Shown here one piece after another: positions 4,139 through 39,449 of a DNA stretch of 64,000 nucleotides. A program made the position numbers and the translations under genes. The notes below the pieces were generated by a model, which saw only the letters and a program-made list of their open reading frames with translations, ran no database searches and had not been told where the DNA came from. How positions within the stretch are numbered: the stretch's first letter is position 1; every line of letters begins with the position of its first letter. The stretch lies in the IMG/VR virus record IMGVR_UViG_3300033141_006329, positions 1-64,000 of that record. One strand, given 5' to 3'.

Positions 4139-5539
4139 TCATAATTTTATAGTTTCTATCTTCCATCCATGCTTTTTATAAATTTCTATTCGTTGTTCGG
4201 ATTTCCTTATAAACCAATTCACTTTAGTATTACTCTCAATCGAGTTGGTTTTAGGCCCCTCTGTATCGATCAAATCCATAACTATGGGAATTTTCTTCCC
4301 CTCCAATTGTCTCTGTATTCTTCCGACACTTTGTAGGACATTTGTTGATGGCGTTGAATGTATTAAACAATCCAAATCTTTTCTATTGTTTCCATCCCGT
4401 GCAGCAAGATACGTTGCAAATATCACCTTTCTTTTATGAAAGGCCGTATCCAAATCATCTGTATTCGAAACAGACAATCTCTCTTCTGAAGTTGTCCCGG
4501 GTATAAATATACCTATGTCTTCTTTGGGTACTAAAGATTTCTTTGCTAATTCTAACAATGTCAATTTTCTCTCTCCTAATATGAGAGTGATCCTTCCTTT
4601 ATCGTAGCATTTTTTAACTAATTTGGATACAGTATCAATATATTTTTGAGATTTGGTTGCTTGCTTGAGATATCTACTTCGACTATATCTTCCTCCCCAA
4701 CATATATATTTTTTATATCTCCCATAAATACCAAATGAAAAGTATATCAAATATATTATTGGTTTTAATATTTCCCCCTCCCCTGGTTCTAGATAAGTAG
4801 TTTCACCTGTATGATATTTGATAATATCATCATTACCATCATTTCTGCTAGGTGTAGCACTTAAACCAAATATCCTTTTACATCTCAAACTCAAAGATGA
4901 TTTAGAAAACTCTTCGGGGCCTATGCCTATATGTACTTCATCGACAAACGCCATTCCAATTCCTGAATTATGCAAGGCTGTCATAAATTCATTATTCTCA
5001 TGCTTTATTGCATATGGTATTATATGTTCTGTGCTGAGTATTATTTTCTTCTGAAAGACCTTTTCATAATTCTTGGTAGATAATTTTCCTATATCGTCCT
5101 CAGTTAAATTTGTAAATTTTAATATCTCACTTTTCCATTGCTCTAATAGTTTCACCTTATGAGCAAATATTATTGTGCGTTTTTTGATTGCTGATATAGC
5201 TGCTATAGCTGCTACAGTTTTTCCTGATCCTGGTTCCAAACATAGTAAGCCGTTGTTATTCTCAGATAATAATTTTATGGCTTTTATCTGTCTGTCGGTA
5301 TTAGGAATTATATTACATTCTATTTCTATATCAACACCTTCATCGGTAAGATCCTTTATTTTATCTGTTACTGGATAAAATCTAGGGATTAGAATATAGT
5401 CTCCCATATCCTCATAAAATCTCATCTTATCTACTTCACCGTTATACCCATACACTATCCTATTTAGATCTCTTTCTATAACCTCAAAATTAGGATGTGA
5501 TTTGGGTAACTCTATTCCTCCACTCCTCTTTAACCTCAT
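4139..5539 (-). CDS. superfamily 2 helicase (UvsW/XPB-like)
   Basis: PGSGKT, DEVH, SAT, QSVGRIQR. Confidence 0.85.
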   Translation of the reverse strand: MRLKRSGGIELPKSHPNFEVIERDLNRIVYGYNGEVDKMRFYEDMGDYILIPRFYPVTDKIKDLTDEGVDIEIECNIIPNTDRQIKAIKLLSENNNGLLCLEPGSGKTVAAIAAISAIKKRTIIFAHKVKLLEQWKSEILKFTNLTEDDIGKLSTKNYEKVFQKKIILSTEHIIPYAIKHENNEFMTALHNSGIGMAFVDEVHIGIGPEEFSKSSLSLRCKRIFGLSATPSRNDGNDDIIKYHTGETTYLEPGEGEILKPIIYLIYFSFGIYGRYKKYICWGGRYSRSRYLKQATKSQKYIDTVSKLVKKCYDKGRITLILGERKLTLLELAKKSLVPKEDIGIFIPGTTSEERLSVSNTDDLDTAFHKRKVIFATYLAARDGNNRKDLDCLIHSTPSTNVLQSVGRIQRQLEGKKIPIVMDLIDTEGPKTNSIESNTKVNWFIRKSEQRIEIYKKHGWKIETIKL

Positions 5540-5555
5540 TTATTTCTATTCCTCT

Positions 5556-6239
5556 CTACCTATTGCATAATTCCAACTCATATTCCTCTATCTCTTCTGG
5601 GCCAAATATACAACAACTACTTGGTGTCTCCCAAAAATCTATACGATGTAAACTACAATCGTCTGTAAAATCTAGGCACAATTTATCAAAAGCCCACTTT
5701 ATTATATTCTCAGAGGTAGGGTTATTTATTGTATCATTGAGTAAAGTGTGGTCCAATTTAGATATTATCTTATCCTTCACCAACTTTTTCAATACAACGA
5801 AATCAATAACCATTCCAGTCTCAGGATCTACTGGTCCCTTTATATATATTCTAATTTTTCCCCGGTGGCCATGGAGGGCACTGCAAGGACCAATATAGTC
5901 AGGGAGGAAATGTGCAAAATCAAATTCAAAATCCTTATATATTATCATTTCTGGCATTTTAATTTCTCCTTTATTTATCCTTCTTTGAAATTTATCTGTT
6001 AACAAATCACCGATCAAATTCCCCAGATCTTTTATCATATAATACACCCCATAGAAAAATGCGCCCCCAACAAGGCCCAGTTGCCATATCATATTAATAT
6101 CCATAACAAATGCAGATTCTTGGATTGTTCCATAATCTGATATAATTGCCACCATGAACCAAATATAAAATATCATAGCAGCTATTTTTCCTAAATTATT
6201 GAAAGTATTTTTTAAATCGTTCATATTTTTCCTCCTCAT
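5556..6239 (-). CDS. queD: 6-carboxytetrahydropterin synthase QueD, in frame with an N-terminal membrane segment
   Basis: FDFAH, CSALHGH, GMVIDF, LDHTLLN, NPTSENI, FWETP; internal RBS AAGGAG before MPEM at about 5957. Confidence 0.85.
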   Translation of the reverse strand: MRRKNMNDLKNTFNNLGKIAAMIFYIWFMVAIISDYGTIQESAFVMDINMIWQLGLVGGAFFYGVYYMIKDLGNLIGDLLTDKFQRRINKGEIKMPEMIIYKDFEFDFAHFLPDYIGPCSALHGHRGKIRIYIKGPVDPETGMVIDFVVLKKLVKDKIISKLDHTLLNDTINNPTSENIIKWAFDKLCLDFTDDCSLHRIDFWETPSSCCIFGPEEIEEYELELCNR

Positions 6240-6865
6240 AAAAATGTATTAGTTATTGAATTATCAGGCATATAGTAAATATTATAATCTCCTGCATCTA
6301 AGTAAAATAGTTGGGTATATTTATTTCTAATTTCCTCATACCGACCACTATCATCAAACCCCACTAACTGTTTTATTGTGAATTGACATTTATATTTATT
6401 TTGAAAATTCAAATATTCTTCAATCATTTCATCTGTTGTATTTGATGTAACCAGATGAGTTATTCTTACATTAGTTAGTTTTGTTAAATATTCCAAATAT
6501 TCAACATCGCCTGATAATATATCACTTGAAAACACGCATCTGTTAACGTGCTTTCTCCAAAAATTCTGATGGGTAAATTGTTCTCGCGTGTGTATATCTA
6601 CTTTCATTCCAAGGCTCTCTGTTATTTCAAAAAATCTTATCCACCACCCAACGTGTCTATCATATTTGTAAAGGCTATCACCTCCGCCAGACACAGATAC
6701 TTTTCCTTTGTCTCTGTGTTCAATTAAGAATTTTTCTAATTTCTTCCAATCCGTTTCTAATCTAATATTCTCCAGACGGTGACCCTTCCAAATACAATAC
6801 CAGCATTTGGCCCTACATCCGAAATTTGTAATTACTGAAATATTTGTGCTAATTGGCCGCAACAT
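6236..6865 (-). CDS. radical SAM protein (possibly QueE-like)
   Basis: CRAKCWYC (CX3CX2C), SGGGDSL; 209 aa; adjacent to queD. Confidence 0.7.
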   Translation of the reverse strand: MLRPISTNISVITNFGCRAKCWYCIWKGHRLENIRLETDWKKLEKFLIEHRDKGKVSVSGGGDSLYKYDRHVGWWIRFFEITESLGMKVDIHTREQFTHQNFWRKHVNRCVFSSDILSGDVEYLEYLTKLTNVRITHLVTSNTTDEMIEEYLNFQNKYKCQFTIKQLVGFDDSGRYEEIRNKYTQLFYLDAGDYNIYYMPDNSITNTFL

Positions 6866-7812
6866 AATCCTGCCTCCTCACATTTTGCTATTGCATCAAT
6901 AACTGTAGGAACTCCTATTTTGTTAAAGTCATTCCCTAATTTTTCCAAAACTTCATAGTTATTATAATTAGCATATGTCTCAAGATGGTTTGTTTCAGAT
7001 CTAATTGTACTATTTAAAGGAATTAATTTCACCCTAAATCTATCACCAGTCAATCCCATTCTTTTCAACTTATTCACATCTATCTCAATGCCCTCCATAA
7101 CAATAAAATTTAGAGTAACTGTTCTATTCGTAATTTCGAATTTATTAAGATAGTTAATTATCTCTTCTATACCCAATACATCTGCCCCACCAAATAACTC
7201 TTTTCTTTTCGATTCATTTGTGGAATTAACTGATATCTGAAAATGTAAAAACCCATCATAATTATTTTCCTTAACTTCCATCACTCTATCAATAATCTCA
7301 AATCCATCCACACCTTCTATTGTTTTTCTTGGCAATATACTATTAAAACAAGGTAACCATCTATAATGTCTACTCATCGAGCGAGAAATTACGGGAAGCC
7401 TCTTAACAATCGTTAATACATTATCTATATTGTGCGCAGGTTCTCCCATTCTAGCAAACCCTATTTTAACTTTATCCGAACGTTGAACATAAGGTGAAAG
7501 ATCTAAAATTAAACGAATCTGGTTTTCTATTTCTATGTCTGTTAAATTTCCTTTAAATTCTAAACTCGGCACATCACAAAACTGACATTTGTGTGGGCAC
7601 CCTTTTTGAGTAGAAACAGTTAATAACCATTTTTCACTATAAGGTTTCAAATGTTTCCATATAATATGAGGATCTAAAGAATTTCTAACTTCGTAATTTT
7701 CTTTGCCGCCAACTGAAACATCTCTCATTTCAGTACATTCAATGAGATATCCATCACAGTCTACTAAAAATATTCTTCCACTTGGAAGATGACATACATC
7801 TTTAATTCTCAT
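6832..7812 (-). CDS. RlmN/Cfr-like radical SAM enzyme
   Basis: VSTQKGCPHKCQFC, RMGEP, QISVNS, IPLN, CCGQL. Confidence 0.8.
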   Translation of the reverse strand: MRIKDVCHLPSGRIFLVDCDGYLIECTEMRDVSVGGKENYEVRNSLDPHIIWKHLKPYSEKWLLTVSTQKGCPHKCQFCDVPSLEFKGNLTDIEIENQIRLILDLSPYVQRSDKVKIGFARMGEPAHNIDNVLTIVKRLPVISRSMSRHYRWLPCFNSILPRKTIEGVDGFEIIDRVMEVKENNYDGFLHFQISVNSTNESKRKELFGGADVLGIEEIINYLNKFEITNRTVTLNFIVMEGIEIDVNKLKRMGLTGDRFRVKLIPLNSTIRSETNHLETYANYNNYEVLEKLGNDFNKIGVPTVIDAIAKCEEAGLCCGQLAQIFQ

Positions 7813-7814
7813 TT

Positions 7815-9170
7815 TTAATCCTCCTTTAAATTTGATTGTTCCAATAATTGTCCAATCTTCTGATATTTATCAATGCATAATTTTTCCGAATTATTCACTA
7901 CTTTCACAAACTTTTCTTTCTTATCTTTAAGCCCATCAATATCAAGAGACACTGAAATCAATTTTCTTATTTTATACTTACTCATAACTCTCTGAATACT
8001 AACTTTATCGCAATGTGATTTTTTTGATAGAACATTACATATTTCATCTGCCGAGGCTAAATTCTTCGTTGCGGATGATACGTGTGATCTAATCTTTTTT
8101 ATAGTTTTCAGGTCCTCTATCTCAACGTCCAGTACTTCTATAGATTTGTTTAAATAATTTTTAAAAGCATCCGAATAGCACGAATATGCCCTCAGTAACA
8201 TTTCATCAACAGATGATATTTTAACATTACCATCATCGACAACATACATATTGAAGGATATAGTATTCTTTAAAACTTCTGGTATTGCTTCACACATTCT
8301 TTCAAAAACCTTATCTTTATTTCTACTCTTCGCTACATCAAATGTCACAGTCGTACCAACATCGCCTGTGGAGTCATCATTATATCCTATATCGCCATTA
8401 GATAACAATCCCCAATCTTTATATTTATCTATCCTATTCAATAACGAAGTTTCAAATACCTGTCTTGGCGACCACCCTTTTATAATTACACATCTTTTAG
8501 CCTCATTTATAATATACTCCCCTTGTACTGAAATTTTGCCAGTTCCATCCATTAACAATTTCTCACAATCTTCATCCGATGACAGAACTTTACATCCTGT
8601 TACTTTTGGTCTTATTATTACTTTATCTCCAATACCCTTAAGATATAATAATCTAAGTATCAAATCAGATAATTCATAACAAGGGATATCTGTCTTAAAT
8701 CCAAATGCTATAGAGGACAATTCAGATAACGCCATAAGACAGAATGGTATCATGGTAGGTATTGCTACTGGTTCAGGATCAGACTCGTCTATTTCCCATT
8801 TGGCATAGTTAACATATTTAAAAGCTAATTCCTCTATAAACTTATTGGCTTTCATATAGGTATAACGAGGAGCAGCTGCACCCTCACTATCTATTCCTAT
8901 ATTAGATCCCCATTGTCCATCACCGTCTGCAAACTTATTTTGAACTGCCCAAACAGTTGTACCTATAGCTTCACTGTGAGGATGCCATCTGGCCATACAT
9001 TCGCCTAATATCTTCGCTGTCTTAACATATTTATTTTTCGCAATTGTATGAGCAGTAAGTAGTATTCTTCTTTGAACAGGAAGGAGTCCATCTATTATGG
9101 ATGGGAGCATCTTTCTGGTGTTTGAATATAAACCGTATTCCCTGTAATATTGCGGTATTAATTTTTCCAT
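7815..9170 (-). CDS. type IIA topoisomerase subunit A (short, no C-terminal pinwheel)
   Basis: DGLLPVQRRIL, KTAK, HPHS, AAPRYT catalytic Tyr. Confidence 0.9.
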   Translation of the reverse strand: MEKLIPQYYREYGLYSNTRKMLPSIIDGLLPVQRRILLTAHTIAKNKYVKTAKILGECMARWHPHSEAIGTTVWAVQNKFADGDGQWGSNIGIDSEGAAAPRYTYMKANKFIEELAFKYVNYAKWEIDESDPEPVAIPTMIPFCLMALSELSSIAFGFKTDIPCYELSDLILRLLYLKGIGDKVIIRPKVTGCKVLSSDEDCEKLLMDGTGKISVQGEYIINEAKRCVIIKGWSPRQVFETSLLNRIDKYKDWGLLSNGDIGYNDDSTGDVGTTVTFDVAKSRNKDKVFERMCEAIPEVLKNTISFNMYVVDDGNVKISSVDEMLLRAYSCYSDAFKNYLNKSIEVLDVEIEDLKTIKKIRSHVSSATKNLASADEICNVLSKKSHCDKVSIQRVMSKYKIRKLISVSLDIDGLKDKKEKFVKVVNNSEKLCIDKYQKIGQLLEQSNLKED

Positions 9171-10337: not shown

Positions 10338-11324
10338 TTAAATATGATTCCAGGCTTTTCGTTTAACTATCCTGTGAACCTGTGTATACGACACAACAGG
10401 ATATTTTGCATGGATCTTGGATACCTTAATTCCTTCCAGATATAAACGTCGAATTCGTTTAACTTGTCGGGTCTTAAGCCGAGCATTAGGATTATGAATA
10501 CCATTCTGATCCTTATCTATGGTTCTTGTCGTAGCAATAGTTCTTGGTACATTTTTCCAAGTAACGCCAGTTGCAACCTTTCGTAAAGCACTGGCTGTGA
10601 GATTGGCATATTCCTCTTGGATATCTGTGTATCGGTATCCTCTGTTTCTTAATGTGGTTACGGTGATTACATCTTCCTCAGTAATTTTCGCCGATGTCAC
10701 ACGGTTAGAAGCATTTCTATATGATCCTACAATACAATCCTTCAAAGAATGTCGTCGGATGGCTTCAGGAATTCTGTGAAACATATCTGGAGAAACACGA
10801 TTGTTCATAAACGCTATCCATTCGGGGTATCCATCCAAATGTTTCCAGGTATTCCAATTTATAACATTATAGATAGTTTCTGGACAGACTTCATGTTCTT
10901 CCGCTACTTCCTTCCTATTGAAATTAACATCTGTTAAGTATCTCTTGCGAATATTCAATACTTTCTCATCTGTTAATATGGAACTTGGGTTTCTTTGGCC
11001 CATTAAAGACCTTCCCTTCTGTACCATATCAGTACTGTTTTTAAATGGGGTTGTTGCAAATAAATGTGCAGGATTAACACACAATGTATTATCACAGAAA
11101 TGAATAATAATATGACCTGTGGGTATGCTACCATGTATATAACGGTATATATAACGTGTAGCAGAGATAGATGTTTTTAATGATCTAACGTAGAAAACAC
11201 CATACTCAGTACCATCTTGCTTGGTTGTAGATCCTTTCCAAATCCACTCACCATTTGCTCGTTTGTCTACTTTGCTCATAAATCGTTCAAATTCTCTTTC
11301 ATCTGTATCAAAATCTTCGTACAT
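10338..11324 (-). mobile_element. free-standing HNH homing endonuclease with repeated C-terminal DNA-binding modules
   Basis: WIWKG, HFCDNTLCVNPAHL, NSTDMVQKGR; repeats NPSSILTDEKV, SAKITEEDV, NPNARLKTRQV. Confidence 0.85.
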
Positions 11325-37057: not shown

Positions 37058-37990
37058 CTACATTAATAGATCTGGGTCTAATTCTTTCCCTAAAACTTCT
37101 TTAACAGCTATATGAAATTCTTCGGGTATATTTTTTGATTGGGGTGAATTAACCAAACCGTATATTATAATAGGTTCAAATATACTACATGCCACCTTGA
37201 ATGGTAATCCAACTGTTCCTAAATTTAATTCTGGATTAGGTGTAATTACTGCCCTCGCTGAGAAATCCACACGTTTGCCCAATAATAAATTTCTAACTAT
37301 TCCATGTTTTTTAGATACCGATACTCTAATTAATTCATACAATTCCTTAATCAAGTTTTGCATCTTATAACTCAATATATCGAATATCGGCCCAGACACA
37401 CCTTTCAACTGATTAGATTGTATAATTATTTTTCTATAGAGAGCATTCAATTCACCTATTTCTGGTTTCTCTCCAGGGCTTTCAGGGATTGATATCTCTC
37501 GATACCTGGGAGGAATAACTATAAGTTTAGACATAAAGAACAGATCTTTTTTTATATTGCTATATATCATCTTTATAAGTTTATTCCTATCGCCACCCTT
37601 TTCATCTTCTCTAAATTTTATTTTTTGAATATTATCAATAAAAGAAGAAAACCCATCCAACTCCCCTTCAGGATCTTCAACCAATAATCCATCATCACCT
37701 ATAGAATATATTTTCTCGCTTGATATTAATGGTTGTATCTTTCTTTCTATCCTTTTATTTAAAATATCAAATAGTGATGGATGTATGACATTACAATTCA
37801 ATTCTATCCAGGAATAACTCTTTGCTCTATCAGGGGAAGCATCTAATCCAAATGTATCCTCTGACATCAATCCTTGTGGATGATATGCATAATTTCTGCC
37901 CATAAATATCTGGGGTGTAGATATAGGACCAATGCTATTATTTTTCCTTATAAAATCATCAGGACTAAGGATCTTAATCATCCAACCCAC
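37058..37990 (-). CDS. rpoC: RNA polymerase beta' N-terminal part
   Basis: GLMSEDTFG, WIELN, VIPPRYR, LLLGKRVDFSARAVITP, GLP. Confidence 0.92.
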   Translation of the reverse strand: MGWMIKILSPDDFIRKNNSIGPISTPQIFMGRNYAYHPQGLMSEDTFGLDASPDRAKSYSWIELNCNVIHPSLFDILNKRIERKIQPLISSEKIYSIGDDGLLVEDPEGELDGFSSFIDNIQKIKFREDEKGGDRNKLIKMIYSNIKKDLFFMSKLIVIPPRYREISIPESPGEKPEIGELNALYRKIIIQSNQLKGVSGPIFDILSYKMQNLIKELYELIRVSVSKKHGIVRNLLLGKRVDFSARAVITPNPELNLGTVGLPFKVACSIFEPIIIYGLVNSPQSKNIPEEFHIAVKEVLGKELDPDLLM

Positions 37991-38378
37991 CCAGATTAGA
38001 TAGACTACCCAAGTCTCTAGTTTTCTTCAATATCTTTTCCAAATTACCATTCACTTTGTATGATCTAGGAAATATCAAAGCTTTACGCTCCAAAGCCTTC
38101 ATATAGAATTCTATTTTATTTACAAATCCCTTATATTTTTTATCCTTTGTCTTATTGTATAGTCTCTTAGCACTAGACAAACTGCGTTTCAACACCGAAA
38201 TAGATACACCACCATATTGATTTTTAACTGCGAATACTGGGGTTCCATTTTTACCAACTGAAAGAAATGATTTGGAATCTGATTTGTATAACTTTTTCCT
38301 GTTGTTTCTACTTTTGAAAAACTCTGCGTCAGGTATAAATCCTGCTTCATGTACTATGTCTCGTATATAATCTATCAT
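37974..38378 (-). CDS. basic hypothetical protein
   Basis: 134-aa ORF after a GGACAAACTA motif. Confidence 0.55.
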   Translation of the reverse strand: MIDYIRDIVHEAGFIPDAEFFKSRNNRKKLYKSDSKSFLSVGKNGTPVFAVKNQYGGVSISVLKRSLSSAKRLYNKTKDKKYKGFVNKIEFYMKALERKALIFPRSYKVNGNLEKILKKTRDLGSLSNLGGLDD

Positions 38379-38401
38379 GGAATCTCCTCACTATAGTTTT
38401 A

Positions 38402-38411
38402 TAGTTTGTCC
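38402..38411 (-). promoter_or_regulatory. repeated motif GGACAAAYTA (candidate late promoter)
   Basis: one of six minus-strand copies found by eye. Confidence 0.55.
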
Positions 38412-39449
38412 TCATCCGTGAGTATTAATATCATCATCTTCTTCAATTAGGGACATAATTTGACATGTGTGTGTACAACCGCCTTTACATAATGACTCTT
38501 TATCTGCTTCTATAGCCTCTTCTATATTTGCTTTTTCTACCCCATCTGATCCATGCTTATCCAATAAATCTATAGCTTTAAACTCTGGTGTATATCTGCC
38601 CCTTATCCGCCCACAACACCGCATGGTCCCGTCACATTCAATCGTGACATTATGCAGATTATCTTTACCTAATTTGCAATCTAAATTAGCAGGTAGTATG
38701 TTATATATCTTCATCAGCAAAGTATCCTTCATATGTATTTTATAATCACTGTCTCTCAATCTTTCAAATATAGCCTTAACTTCAGAATTCTTTGGAACTA
38801 ATAATTCGGGGTTGGTTACAGATGAGAAATCATAATAATTATTCTTTGCAATATCCAATACTGTTATATCTGAATATATTTCATTGGCCGACAATTTTTC
38901 TACTGTTTCTTCTAAATATTTTATATTATCCTTATCCACAGTAATTTCTGCTACAGGGTCATCTACTAAACCATCATATATCAATCTAACCAACATATTA
39001 AATCCGGCATTAGATTTATACATCTCATCATCATCTATACTATCATGCAACCAAAAACCTGGATCTACAGATGCAGTGAATCCTTTTATTCTACCCACCT
39101 TATCAAACATATCTCCTATGAGTGGTCTTATTGTGTCACTACAATTTGATATTATTGTATAATTTGCATCTATGTTTTTAAGATGTTTTAAAACAGTTGG
39201 TAATTCTTTATACAGGAAAGGTTCTCCCCCAAATAATATAAAGAATATATCTTTATTATGCTTGACCATTCTATCTATCATGTCTATCCAAAACTCTGGA
39301 GATTGCTCATTCTGGAAATAATATTTACCATTTGGATATTCTTTTGGTTGAAGAATATAATCTATATCTCCGCTAAATCTACAATAATCACAATGCAGGT
39401 TACACCGTCTAGTTAATACCAATGTTGCTATTTTAATTTTGTTTTCCAT
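38412..39449 (-). CDS. radical SAM protein with C-terminal Cys-rich (SPASM/twitch-like) region
   Basis: CNLHCDYC, GGEP, CDG..RCC, CKGGCTHTC. Confidence 0.85.
   Translation of the reverse strand: MENKIKIATLVLTRRCNLHCDYCRFSGDIDYILQPKEYPNGKYYFQNEQSPEFWIDMIDRMVKHNKDIFFILFGGEPFLYKELPTVLKHLKNIDANYTIISNCSDTIRPLIGDMFDKVGRIKGFTASVDPGFWLHDSIDDDEMYKSNAGFNMLVRLIYDGLVDDPVAEITVDKDNIKYLEETVEKLSANEIYSDITVLDIAKNNYYDFSSVTNPELLVPKNSEVKAIFERLRDSDYKIHMKDTLLMKIYNILPANLDCKLGKDNLHNVTIECDGTMRCCGRIRGRYTPEFKAIDLLDKHGSDGVEKANIEEAIEADKESLCKGGCTHTCQIMSLIEEDDDINTHG

What the first reader, a model, noticed from the sequence alone, without database searches (positions are those of the whole stretch)
5556..7812. queD + radical SAM + RlmN/Cfr-like enzyme lacking the resolving cysteine
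Seen: three overlapping or adjacent genes. The RlmN-like protein keeps CX3CX2C and the methyl-accepting C-terminal Cys (CCGQL), but has LTVSTQKGC where E. coli RlmN has LCVSSQVGC (C118), and ARMGEP for MGMGEP. Known: C118 resolves the covalent enzyme-RNA adduct; QueD plus QueE make the 7-deazaguanine precursor CDG used in phage DNA modification. Inference: a non-canonical base-modification pathway, such as methylation of a deazapurine or another substrate, or cross-linking. FolE, QueC and DpdA are not in this window.
Basis: partly seen in the sequence, partly recalled or inferred. Interest (0 to 1): 0.65.

Follow-up and report, generated by a model that had tools for sequence, protein, structure and literature searches.

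The report
Phage radical-SAM gene pair beside QueD
A giant phage carries a conserved pair of radical-SAM enzymes, one of them a stripped-down cousin of the RNA methylase RlmN that lacks the cysteine normally needed to release its product; the neighbouring QueD gene is an unrelated passenger, not part of the same pathway.

Summary
The three genes exist as described, on the minus strand: an RlmN/Cfr-like radical-SAM protein (7812-6832), a 209-aa radical-SAM protein (6865-6236) and a QueD ORF (6239-5556). The missing resolving cysteine is confirmed. T65 aligns with RlmN C118 and Cfr C105, and C318 aligns with the methyl-carrier Cys.

The proposed pathway is not supported.
- The small radical-SAM protein matches no QueE model.
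- A clear QueE lies about 110 kb away in the same 223-kb phage record.
- In 63 related viral loci the two radical-SAM genes are adjacent in about 59. QueD is within 10 kb in none.
- Five large genomes that carry the pair have no QueD at all.
- No FolE or DpdA was found in the record.

The conserved unit is therefore a two-gene radical-SAM module, seen almost only on phage or phage-like contigs and uncharacterised. The RlmN-like member lacks RlmN's N-terminal RNA-binding domain. It keeps two extra conserved cysteines (C155, C317) that could replace C118. Its substrate is unknown.

In a sister clade (crAss-like, Moorella and Vibrio phages) the methyl-carrier Cys sits on a separate peptide of about 40 aa. 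I class the module as a new variant of class A radical-SAM methylases, of moderate to high interest.

The parts
6832..7812 (-). P0003, 326 aa. An RlmN/Cfr-fold radical-SAM protein without the N-terminal helical domain. Cluster cysteines C72/C76/C79 (codons 7599-7576). T65 (7620-7618) stands at the RlmN C118 position. C155 (7350-7348) lies on core strand beta3. C317-C318 (6864-6859) form the vicinal pair in LCCGQL, with C318 at the methyl-carrier position.
6236..6865 (-). P0002, 209 aa. A compact radical-SAM core (C17/C21/C24, SGGGD, conserved C-terminal GDYNIYYMPDN) and the conserved partner of P0003. It is not QueE.
6832..6885 (-). Dual-coding junction. The P0002 Shine-Dalgarno GAGGAGG lies in the P0003 codons for E312-E313. 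The P0002 ATG (6865-6863) is built from the last base of the L316 codon and the first two bases of the C317 codon. This suggests translational coupling.
   Evidence: the N-terminal MLR(T/P)xS(P/T)NIS of P0002 is conserved in its homologs
5556..5957 (-). QueD (6-carboxytetrahydropterin synthase) domain, P0001 residues 95-227. It has its own internal start (ATG 5957) preceded by AAAGGAGA. It is adjacent to the radical-SAM pair only in this genome and is not part of the conserved module.
5958..6239 (-). In-frame N-terminal extension of the QueD ORF, about 94 aa, with two hydrophobic stretches that look like membrane helices. The likely start is the second ATG (6224), after GAGGAGG. No relative of this extension was found.
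   Evidence: sequence reading; the membrane helices are inferred
7815..9170 (-). Context only: topoisomerase II A-subunit gene, which ends 3 nt before the P0003 start. Same strand, probably the same transcript.
4139..5539 (-). Context only: SF2 DNA helicase gene downstream of QueD. SSB and SbcD follow further downstream.

Best explanation
Shown. The window is the first 64 kb of a 223-kb jumbo-phage record. Two overlapping genes inside a DNA-replication operon form a conserved two-gene radical-SAM module, seen almost only on phage or phage-like contigs. QueD is a separate auxiliary gene that happens to sit downstream in this one genome. It pairs functionally with the record's real QueE, about 110 kb away, in making 7-deazaguanine precursors from host-derived substrate.

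Shown. P0003 is an offshoot of the class A radical-SAM methylases (RlmN/Cfr). It has the same fold, the same CX3CX2C cluster and the same C-terminal CGQL loop cysteine that in RlmN carries the methyl group. It has no N-terminal RNA-recognition domain and no cysteine at the resolving position.

Inferred. P0003 methylates its own C318 from SAM. It then uses a 5'-deoxyadenosyl radical to turn that methyl into a methylene radical, which adds to an sp2 carbon of a purine in a nucleic acid or a nucleotide. The covalent intermediate is released by another group, most plausibly C317 (vicinal to C318) or C155 on strand beta3. Both are conserved down to 42% identity. P0002, a minimal radical-SAM enzyme that is nearly always adjacent, carries out a coupled radical step on the same substrate, before or after the methyl transfer. 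The substrate and the product are not known.
For: Module conservation.
- P0003 has more than 470 and P0002 more than 210 metagenomic homologs at 60-77% identity.
- Of 63 viral loci with a P0003 relative, 57 have a P0002 relative next to it. The gene order is reversed in the more distant groups.
- L040 has its P0002 relatives just outside the fetched stretch. L025 has a different CX3CX2C ORF overlapping its P0003 relative.
- All-against-all clustering of neighbouring ORFs finds no third conserved gene.

Independence from QueD. P0002 is not QueE. The true QueE (SIQGEG, CX3CX2C, SGGEP) hits all five QueE models.

RlmN/Cfr kinship of P0003. Model residues 1-324 align to RlmN 80-362 at Z 25.

Cysteine pattern. 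C317 persists in the far group, where the genes do not overlap, so dual coding alone does not explain it.

Role of C118 and C105 in RlmN and Cfr: review PMC9692996.
Against: No experiment bears on this, and no characterised close relative exists.
- The complex prediction for P0003 with P0002 gave no answer.
- One 93%-complete genome (L028) has a P0003 relative but no P0002, so the partner is not obligatory.
The C-terminal loop 309-318 is modelled at pLDDT below 50.
- A sister subfamily has no second conserved Cys at all. So Cys-based resolution may not be how this clade works.
- Gene neighbourhoods are heterogeneous: NAD salvage, RNA repair, DNA methylases and replication genes. They do not identify the substrate.
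Confidence: 0.55

Rival explanations
1. QueD, P0002 acting as QueE, and P0003 form one pathway that makes and C-methylates a 7-deazapurine, for phage DNA modification.
For: The three genes are contiguous and overlapping in this genome. QueD is genuine. The record also has a QueE and a weak QueC-like protein, so deazaguanine precursors are probably made during infection.
Against: QueD is absent near the pair in 63 of 63 related loci, and absent from 5 of 5 large genomes with the pair. P0002 hits no QueE model and lacks the QGEG motif. A separate true QueE exists. No FolE, TGT/DpdA, DpdA3 or DpdA4 was found. DpdA is the signature of deazaguanine DNA modification (PMC10516641).
Confidence: 0.06
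2. Ordinary RNA methylation. P0003 is a phage RlmN or Cfr that makes m2A or m8A on host 23S rRNA A2503 or tRNA A37, using another cysteine as the resolving residue. P0002 would have an unrelated or accessory role.
For: RlmN and Cfr are the closest families by sequence and by fold. Some lineages carry RNA-repair genes nearby: RNA ligase in three, RtcB, a CCA-adding enzyme and PTH2. Two distant phage homologs, in Salmonella phage Arash and Aeromonas phage Ahp1, keep the C118-type Cys and may be true RNA methylases.
Against: The N-terminal helical domain that RlmN and Cfr use for RNA recognition is absent. Scores lie far below the equivalog cut-offs, 56.9 against 290 bits. The tight linkage to a second radical-SAM enzyme is unexplained. 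The record has no tRNA genes.
Confidence: 0.17
3. Programmed covalent cross-linking. Without a resolving residue, the Cys-CH2 radical adduct is the end product. The enzyme's C-terminal tail, or in the sister clade a separate 40-aa peptide, becomes methylene-bridged to a purine in RNA, DNA or a nucleotide. P0002 or a protease then processes the adduct.
For: Mutating C118 in RlmN gives a stable protein-RNA cross-link (PMC9692996; PDB 5HR6 and 5HR7). The canonical Cys is absent across the whole clade. In crAss-like (79 of 80 loci), Moorella and Vibrio phages the AACGQL segment is a separate small ORF. It is duplicated in tandem in Vibrio phage D479, and those cores keep no other conserved Cys. 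An SprT-like protease gene directly follows the P0003 relative in the 42%-identity group.
Against: This would be a single-turnover enzyme, which is costly. The window's subfamily does have spare conserved cysteines (C155, C317). A split gene may simply reassemble into a normal enzyme. SprT-like genes are common in phages. There is no direct evidence for any adduct.
Confidence: 0.12
4. Small-molecule target. The pair modifies an adenine nucleotide such as NAD+ or ADP-ribose, or a nucleotide signal, as a counter-defence measure.
For: NAD-related genes recur next to the pair in separate lineages: NAMPT, NAD synthase, SIR2, NadR-like AAA_28, NADAR and Nudix. Two P0002 homologs carry an inserted NMNAT-like domain, GRFQPxHKGH...ISGTKIR. 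P0003 lacks an RNA-binding domain. P0002's nearest folds include the nucleotide-acting viperin and MoaA.
Against: Such auxiliary genes cluster in variable regions of large phages anyway, and I made no enrichment statistic. The fold similarity of P0002 is generic. No class A methylase is known to act on a free nucleotide.
Confidence: 0.1

Closest known systems
RlmN (dual-specificity 23S rRNA A2503 / tRNA A37 C2-methyltransferase), class A radical-SAM methylase
   Same: Same radical-SAM core with accessory beta-strands (VIA-align Z 25, 268 residues, rmsd 2.9). Same CX3CX2C motif, a 'MGEP' SAM motif, and a C-terminal CGQL loop cysteine aligned with C355.
   Different: T65 replaces C118. There is no N-terminal helical RNA-binding domain (RlmN residues 1-79 have no counterpart). 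A 25-residue insert spans positions 31-60. Extra conserved cysteines stand at C155 and C317. The score is 56.9 bits against a 290-bit cut-off. It is paired with a second radical-SAM gene. It is seen almost only on phage or phage-like contigs.
Cfr (23S rRNA A2503 C8-methyltransferase)
   Same: The alignment covers residues 52-322, including the terminal 'CGQL'. The fold matches at Z 18.
   Different: The Cfr C105 equivalent and the N-terminal domain are both absent. The score is 47 bits against a 468-bit cut-off. Nothing here indicates a role in antibiotic resistance.
QueE (7-carboxy-7-deazaguanine synthase)
   Same: P0002 is of similar size (about 210 aa), is a minimal radical-SAM barrel, and lies next to QueD in this genome.
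   Different: P0002 hits none of the five QueE NCBIfam models and has no QGEG motif. Structurally QueE ranks below SuiB, viperin, PqqE and MoaA. P0002's relatives never sit beside QueD. The genome has its own QueE elsewhere.
Phage 7-deazaguanine DNA-modification systems (FolE-QueD-QueE-QueC plus DpdA; Hutinet et al. 2023, PMC10516641)
   Same: QueD and QueE are present in the record, and a weak QueC-like PP-loop protein is also present.
   Different: The genes are scattered rather than clustered. FolE and every DpdA type searched are missing. The QueC-like gene sits in a heptose-type sugar cluster. The radical-SAM pair is unrelated to this system.
Split RlmN-like genes of crAss-like Kehishuvirus, Moorella phage MTATph1 and Vibrio phage D479 (unannotated; phrog_24834)
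   Same: Same phage clade of RlmN-like proteins (24-32% identity). They also lack the C118-type Cys.
   Different: The C-terminal helix-strand-AACGQL segment is a separate ORF of 39-44 aa. There is no vicinal CC, no partner radical-SAM gene nearby, and G at the C118 position.

Membership tests
Class A radical-SAM methylases (RlmN/Cfr) | Radical-SAM core with a CX3CX2C [4Fe-4S] motif | tested here: met
   C72, C76 and C79 are invariant in 30 homologs. PF04055 scores 32 bits against a 29.5-bit cut-off.
Class A radical-SAM methylases (RlmN/Cfr) | RlmN/Cfr-specific fold (core plus accessory strands plus C-terminal loop) | tested here: met
   6FZ6, RlmN and Cfr are the top matches at Z 25.7, 25.3 and 18.2. 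The next radical-SAM fold scores 14.5.
Class A radical-SAM methylases (RlmN/Cfr) | Methyl-carrier cysteine in the C-terminal loop (RlmN C355, Cfr C338) | tested here: met
   C318 in LCCGQL aligns with the Cfr AACGQL cysteine. It is invariant. Whether it is actually methylated could not be tested.
Class A radical-SAM methylases (RlmN/Cfr) | Second, resolving cysteine seven residues before the cluster motif (RlmN C118, Cfr C105) | tested here: not met
   T65 aligns with C118 and C105. The position is an invariant T in the close group, A in the 42% group, and G or T in other phage relatives.
Class A radical-SAM methylases (RlmN/Cfr) | N-terminal helical domain for RNA recognition | tested here: not met
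   Model residues 1-324 map to RlmN 80-362, and nothing corresponds to RlmN 1-79.
Class A radical-SAM methylases (RlmN/Cfr) | Score above the curated family cut-off | tested here: not met
   TIGR00048 scores 56.9 against 290 bits. The Cfr models score 43-47 against 468-550 bits.
Class A radical-SAM methylases (RlmN/Cfr) | C-methylation of adenine C2 or C8 in RNA | not testable with these tools
   This needs anaerobic enzymology or nucleoside mass spectrometry.
QueE (for P0002) | Match to QueE profile models and the N-terminal QGEG substrate motif | tested here: not met
   No QueE model matches at E below 0.1, and the sequence lacks QGEG. The control in the same genome, P0245, hits all five models and has SIQGEG.
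QueE (for P0002) | Genomic association with QueD and QueC in relatives | tested here: not met
   0 of 63 loci and 0 of 5 genomes.
QueE (for P0002) | QueE-specific fold features | tested here: inconclusive
   QueE chains score Z 11.5, 10.3 and 8.9. That is within the generic radical-SAM range and below SuiB at 14.2 and viperin at 13.9.
QueD (for P0001 residues 95-227) | PTPS/QueD profile above cut-off and the Cx3HGH motif | tested here: met
   PF01242 scores 110.8 against 22.4 bits. TIGR03367 scores 89.6 against 89.25 bits. The CSALHGH motif is present.
Phage 7-deazaguanine DNA modification system | DpdA-family DNA transglycosylase (the signature protein) | tested here: not met
   PF01702, PF20314 (DpdA4) and phiST DpdA3 all found nothing in the 223-kb record. 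Caveats: the record is estimated 71% complete, and the DpdA3 search used a single sequence.
Phage 7-deazaguanine DNA modification system | FolE, QueD, QueE and QueC precursor genes | tested here: inconclusive
   QueD and QueE are present. FolE is absent. The QueC-like protein is weak (28.7 bits) and sits in a sugar-pathway cluster.

The most novel reading that the evidence does not exclude
This phage clade of RlmN-like proteins has given up the resolving cysteine on purpose. The enzymes would act as radical 'staplers' that leave a Cys-CH2-purine thioether between a protein tail, or a dedicated 40-aa peptide in crAss-like, Moorella and Vibrio phages, and a base in RNA, DNA or a nucleotide. In the window's subfamily the second radical-SAM enzyme P0002 would process that adduct. 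This would be a new type of enzymatic peptide-nucleobase conjugation used during phage infection.
Probability: 0.12. Interest if true: 0.9.

Novelty: new variant of a known kind. Interest (0 to 1): 0.58.

Why it matters
Class A radical-SAM methylases are defined by two catalytic cysteines, and only RlmN and Cfr have been studied. This work finds a large clade seen almost only on phage or phage-like contigs, with hundreds of metagenomic members and cultured crAss-like, Bacteroides, Moorella and Vibrio phages among its wider relatives. The clade keeps the methyl-carrier Cys and drops the resolving Cys and the RNA-binding domain. It is either welded to a second radical-SAM gene or has its carrier Cys on a separate mini-peptide.

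Working out what it modifies would extend the known chemistry of this enzyme class. It could also reveal a new nucleic-acid or nucleotide modification used in phage-host conflict in anaerobic habitats.

The result also corrects a tempting mis-annotation. A small radical-SAM gene next to QueD is not necessarily QueE.

Tried and rejected
- Megablast of the region against GenBank phages found no match.
- The complex prediction for P0003 with P0002 gave no answer (score 0.00). It counts neither for nor against binding.
- A profile of P0002 against PDB sequences found no hit.
- The protein-atlas and atlas fold searches for P0002 returned only unnamed viral clusters and generic Fer4_12 or MoaA-like radical-SAM clusters.
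- I looked for a third conserved gene around the pair. The only extra cluster was an antisense artefact ORF inside the P0003 gene.
- Peptide-pattern scans with the QueD N-terminal extension found no relatives of the extension. The QueD matches, at 26-43% identity, start at residues 77-103.
- Searches of the record for FolE, TGT/DpdA, DpdA4 and DpdA3 found nothing. The record also has no tRNA genes.
- The genome-contig scan returned mostly mis-binned phage contigs in MAGs of unrelated phyla, so it gave no host inference. One hit is in a cultured isolate, 'Bacterium 1xD42-87'.
- Literature searches on phage RlmN-like or radical-SAM pairs found no description of this module.
- pI and net charge of the two families are uninformative.
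- Neighbourhood Pfam tallies were made by scanning sets of unrelated neighbour ORFs as pseudo-alignments. They gave themes (NAD, RNA repair, DNA methylases) but no consistent partner, and I computed no enrichment statistic.
- I did not use the sequencing-run or read-laying tools or the large representative-protein search.
Full report
**What is there.** The window is the first 64 kb of a 223,370-bp IMG/VR virus record. The record is classed as 'provirus' with CheckV completeness 71%. GC is about 32% and nearly all genes are on the minus strand. Positions 5556-7812 hold three minus-strand ORFs:
- P0003, 7812-6832, 326 aa
- P0002, 6865-6236, 209 aa
- P0001, 6239-5556, 227 aa

They lie between a topoisomerase II A-subunit gene (9170-7815) and an SF2 helicase, SSB and SbcD. 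This is a replication operon. P0003 starts 3 nt after the topoisomerase stop, behind AAAGGAGG. The P0002 start codon and its GAGGAGG Shine-Dalgarno lie inside the last codons of P0003. The P0001 ORF overlaps the P0002 stop.

**Check of the observation.**
- P0003 has C72-x3-C76-x2-C79, FARMGEP and a C-terminal LCCGQL.
- Its best family hits are RlmN (TIGR00048, E 1.6e-15, 56.9 bits) and several Cfr models, all far below the curated cut-offs of 290-550 bits.
- A profile of 30 homologs aligned to PDB sequences places 'LLTVSTQKGC' on RlmN 'TLCVSSQVGC' and Cfr 'FCISSQCGC'. So T65 stands where C118 and C105 stand.
- The same profile places 'CCGQL' on Cfr 'AACGQL'. So C318 stands at the methyl-carrier position.
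- The AlphaFold model (pLDDT 88.4) finds RlmN, the Sphaerobacter RlmN-like protein 6FZ6 and Cfr first.
- With VIA-align, model residues 1-324 superpose on RlmN 80-362 at Z 25 (268 residues, rmsd 2.9). The best unrelated radical-SAM enzyme reaches Z 14.5.
- P0003 therefore has the class A methylase fold minus the N-terminal helical domain that RlmN and Cfr use on RNA.
- The review PMC9692996 states that class A enzymes 'use two conserved cysteine residues' and that C118 and C105 are indispensable for resolving the protein-RNA cross-link.

**QueD is real; 'QueE' is not.** P0001 residues 100-213 match PTPS/QueD (PF01242, 110.8 bits; TIGR03367, 89.6 bits, just over its cut-off) and carry CSALHGH.

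P0002 has CX3CX2C and SGGGD but matches none of the five QueE models. Its only hits are marginal ones to EpmB and NrdG2 over the cluster region, and it lacks the QGEG motif. Its model (pLDDT 87) is a bare radical-SAM barrel. It resembles the SuiB core, viperin, PqqE and MoaA (Z 12.6-14.2) more than QueE (Z 8.9-11.5).

The same record holds two further radical-SAM ORFs, four in all. One of them, at G000 117845-118639, is a clear QueE. It has SIQGEG, CX3CX2C and SGGEP, and it hits all five QueE models at E 2.6e-16 to 9e-8. A weak QueC-like PP-loop protein lies at about 109.5 kb. It is embedded among a GT9 glycosyltransferase, a methyltransferase and an HldE-like kinase/nucleotidyltransferase, so its role is doubtful.

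FolE, TGT/DpdA, DpdA4 (PF20314) and DpdA3 (phiST CGPG_00065) were not found. According to PMC10516641, DpdA is the signature of deazaguanine DNA modification. The record is incomplete, so this absence is not final.

**Synteny test.** P0003 has more than 470 and P0002 more than 210 metagenomic homologs at 60-77% identity.
- A scan of IMG/VR gave 63 loci with a P0003 relative, spanning 71% down to 40% identity.
- In 57 of them a P0002 relative is adjacent. It overlaps downstream in the closest group and lies upstream in the more distant groups.
- QueD is within 10 kb in none.
- L040 has P0002 relatives just outside the fetched stretch. L025 has a different CX3CX2C ORF overlapping the end of its P0003 relative.
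- One 93%-complete genome (L028) has P0003 without P0002.
- The closest relatives, at 77% identity, also lack QueD.
- Five large genomes with the pair have no PTPS/QueD at all, and four of them are at least 90% complete.
- Clustering all neighbouring ORFs shows that only the two radical-SAM genes are shared. A third cluster is an antisense artefact.

The conserved unit is the pair.

**Cysteines.** Besides the cluster and C318, the 30 close homologs keep C155 (WLPCFNS, on core strand beta3), C311 and C317.
- The 42%-identity group keeps C155 and the vicinal CC but not C311.
- C311 and the following EE coincide with the P0002 ribosome-binding site. Their conservation may therefore be a dual-coding effect.
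- C317 also overlaps the P0002 ATG. But it persists where the genes do not overlap, so it is likely functional.
- C317 and C155 are thus candidates for a relocated resolving residue. I could not measure distances, and the loop 309-318 is modelled with low confidence.

**Wider family, found in passing.** GenBank phages hold 13 distant homologs at 24-32% identity.
- Salmonella phage Arash and Aeromonas phage Ahp1 keep the C118-type Cys (VMCVSTQAGC).
- Bacteroides phage Versailles has T at that position.
- Moorella phage MTATph1, the crAss-like Kehishuvirus tikkala and Vibrio phage D479 have G there.
- In those last three phages the core ORF stops about 40 residues early. A separate small ORF with its own start encodes the missing helix-strand-AACGQL segment. 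In the Vibrio phage that segment is duplicated in tandem.
- In 79 of 80 crAss-like metagenomic loci the same 39-44-aa ORF follows the core.
- These split proteins have no other conserved Cys and no second radical-SAM gene nearby.

Loss of the resolving Cys is therefore a trait of a whole phage clade, with two different elaborations: CC plus a partner radical-SAM gene, or the carrier Cys on a mini-peptide.

**Context clues.** Neighbourhoods differ between lineages.
- NAD metabolism recurs: NAMPT, NAD synthase, SIR2, NadR-like AAA_28, NADAR, Nudix, and an NMNAT-like domain inserted into two P0002 homologs.
- RNA repair recurs: RNA ligase three times, RtcB, a CCA-adding enzyme and PTH2.
- DNA methylases appear four times.
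- Band 7/SPFH appears in three distant lineages.
- An SprT-like protease gene lies directly downstream in the 42% group.

I did not compute enrichment. These are leads only. The record has no tRNA genes. The genome-contig hits are mostly phage contigs binned into unrelated MAGs.

**Most likely mechanism.**
- Shown: P0003 belongs structurally to the class A methylases and keeps the carrier Cys. P0002 is an intact minimal radical-SAM enzyme. The two are translationally coupled and co-inherited.
- Inferred: C318 is methylated by SAM and activated by a 5'-deoxyadenosyl radical. It then adds to an sp2 carbon of a purine. Release uses C317 or C155. P0002 performs a coupled radical step on the same substrate.
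- Unknown: whether the target is RNA, DNA or a nucleotide.

QueD, with the distant QueE, more likely supplies CDG or preQ0-type precursors independently.

**Rivals.** The rivals are ordinary rRNA/tRNA methylation using another Cys, deliberate cross-linking, and a small-molecule (NAD-type) target.

**Novelty and verdict.** No paper in the searchable library describes this module, and PHROGs lists both families as of unknown function. It fails two defining features of class A methylases, so I do not file it as RlmN or Cfr. It is a new variant of that kind. Interest is moderate to high for radical-SAM enzymology and phage biology.

Noticed in passing
L101 2836-3758 (Kehishuvirus tikkala); L002 4851-5813 (Moorella phage MTATph1); L003 4830-5910 (Vibrio phage D479); L103-L182: In these phages the RlmN-like gene is split. 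The core ends about 40 residues early, and a separate 39-44-aa ORF encodes the helix-strand-AACGQL segment with the methyl-carrier Cys. The module is duplicated in tandem in Vibrio phage D479. The small ORF is present in 79 of 80 crAss-like loci.
   Followed up: partly
window 5958-6239 (-): The QueD ORF carries an in-frame N-terminal extension of about 94 aa with two hydrophobic, helix-like stretches. There is a strong internal Shine-Dalgarno and an ATG (5957) just before the QueD domain, so two products are possible. No relative of the extension was found.
   Followed up: partly
G000 115049-120035 (L183 11050-16035), outside the window: The record's true QueE gene (264 aa) sits between an 842-aa UDG-PolB fusion, whose polymerase domain stops midway through the Pfam model, and a 461-aa ORF without a Pfam hit. 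The family B polymerase may be split, with QueE inserted between the pieces.
   Followed up: no
G000 107373-112261 (L183 3374-8262), outside the window: A cluster of a GT9 heptosyltransferase-like gene, a class I SAM methyltransferase, a weak QueC-like PP-loop protein, a 179-aa ORF and an HldE-like PfkB kinase/cytidylyltransferase. It looks like a sugar-nucleotide pathway rather than preQ0 synthesis.
   Followed up: no
window 37058-39449 (-): A third radical-SAM protein (345 aa; weak hits to SPASM-type peptide maturases, viperin and MoaA) lies next to a 310-aa ORF that matches a segment of RNA polymerase beta'. That is the pattern of jumbo phages with split multisubunit RNA polymerases.
   Followed up: no
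P0188 and P0212 (metagenomic homologs of P0002): An NMNAT-type nucleotidyltransferase domain (GRFQPxHKGH ... ISGTKIR) is inserted after residue 12. It is flanked by a duplicated NISVI, as if a gene cassette had landed in frame in the overlap between the two radical-SAM genes.
   Followed up: partly
L050 8059-11589 and related loci L030-L071: In the 42%-identity group the order is SIR2, P0002-like, a 142-aa ORF, P0003-like, then an SprT-like protease. Band 7, a reverse transcriptase and TnpB lie nearby.
   Followed up: partly
whole record G000: No tRNA gene is found in 223 kb of a jumbo-phage record. The protein database lists P0003 on a 306-kb contig, so about 80 kb of sequence lies outside the IMG/VR 'provirus' record.
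   Followed up: no
window 10338-11324 (-): A 328-aa HNH homing-endonuclease-like gene lies among the replication genes upstream of the topoisomerase subunit.
   Followed up: no
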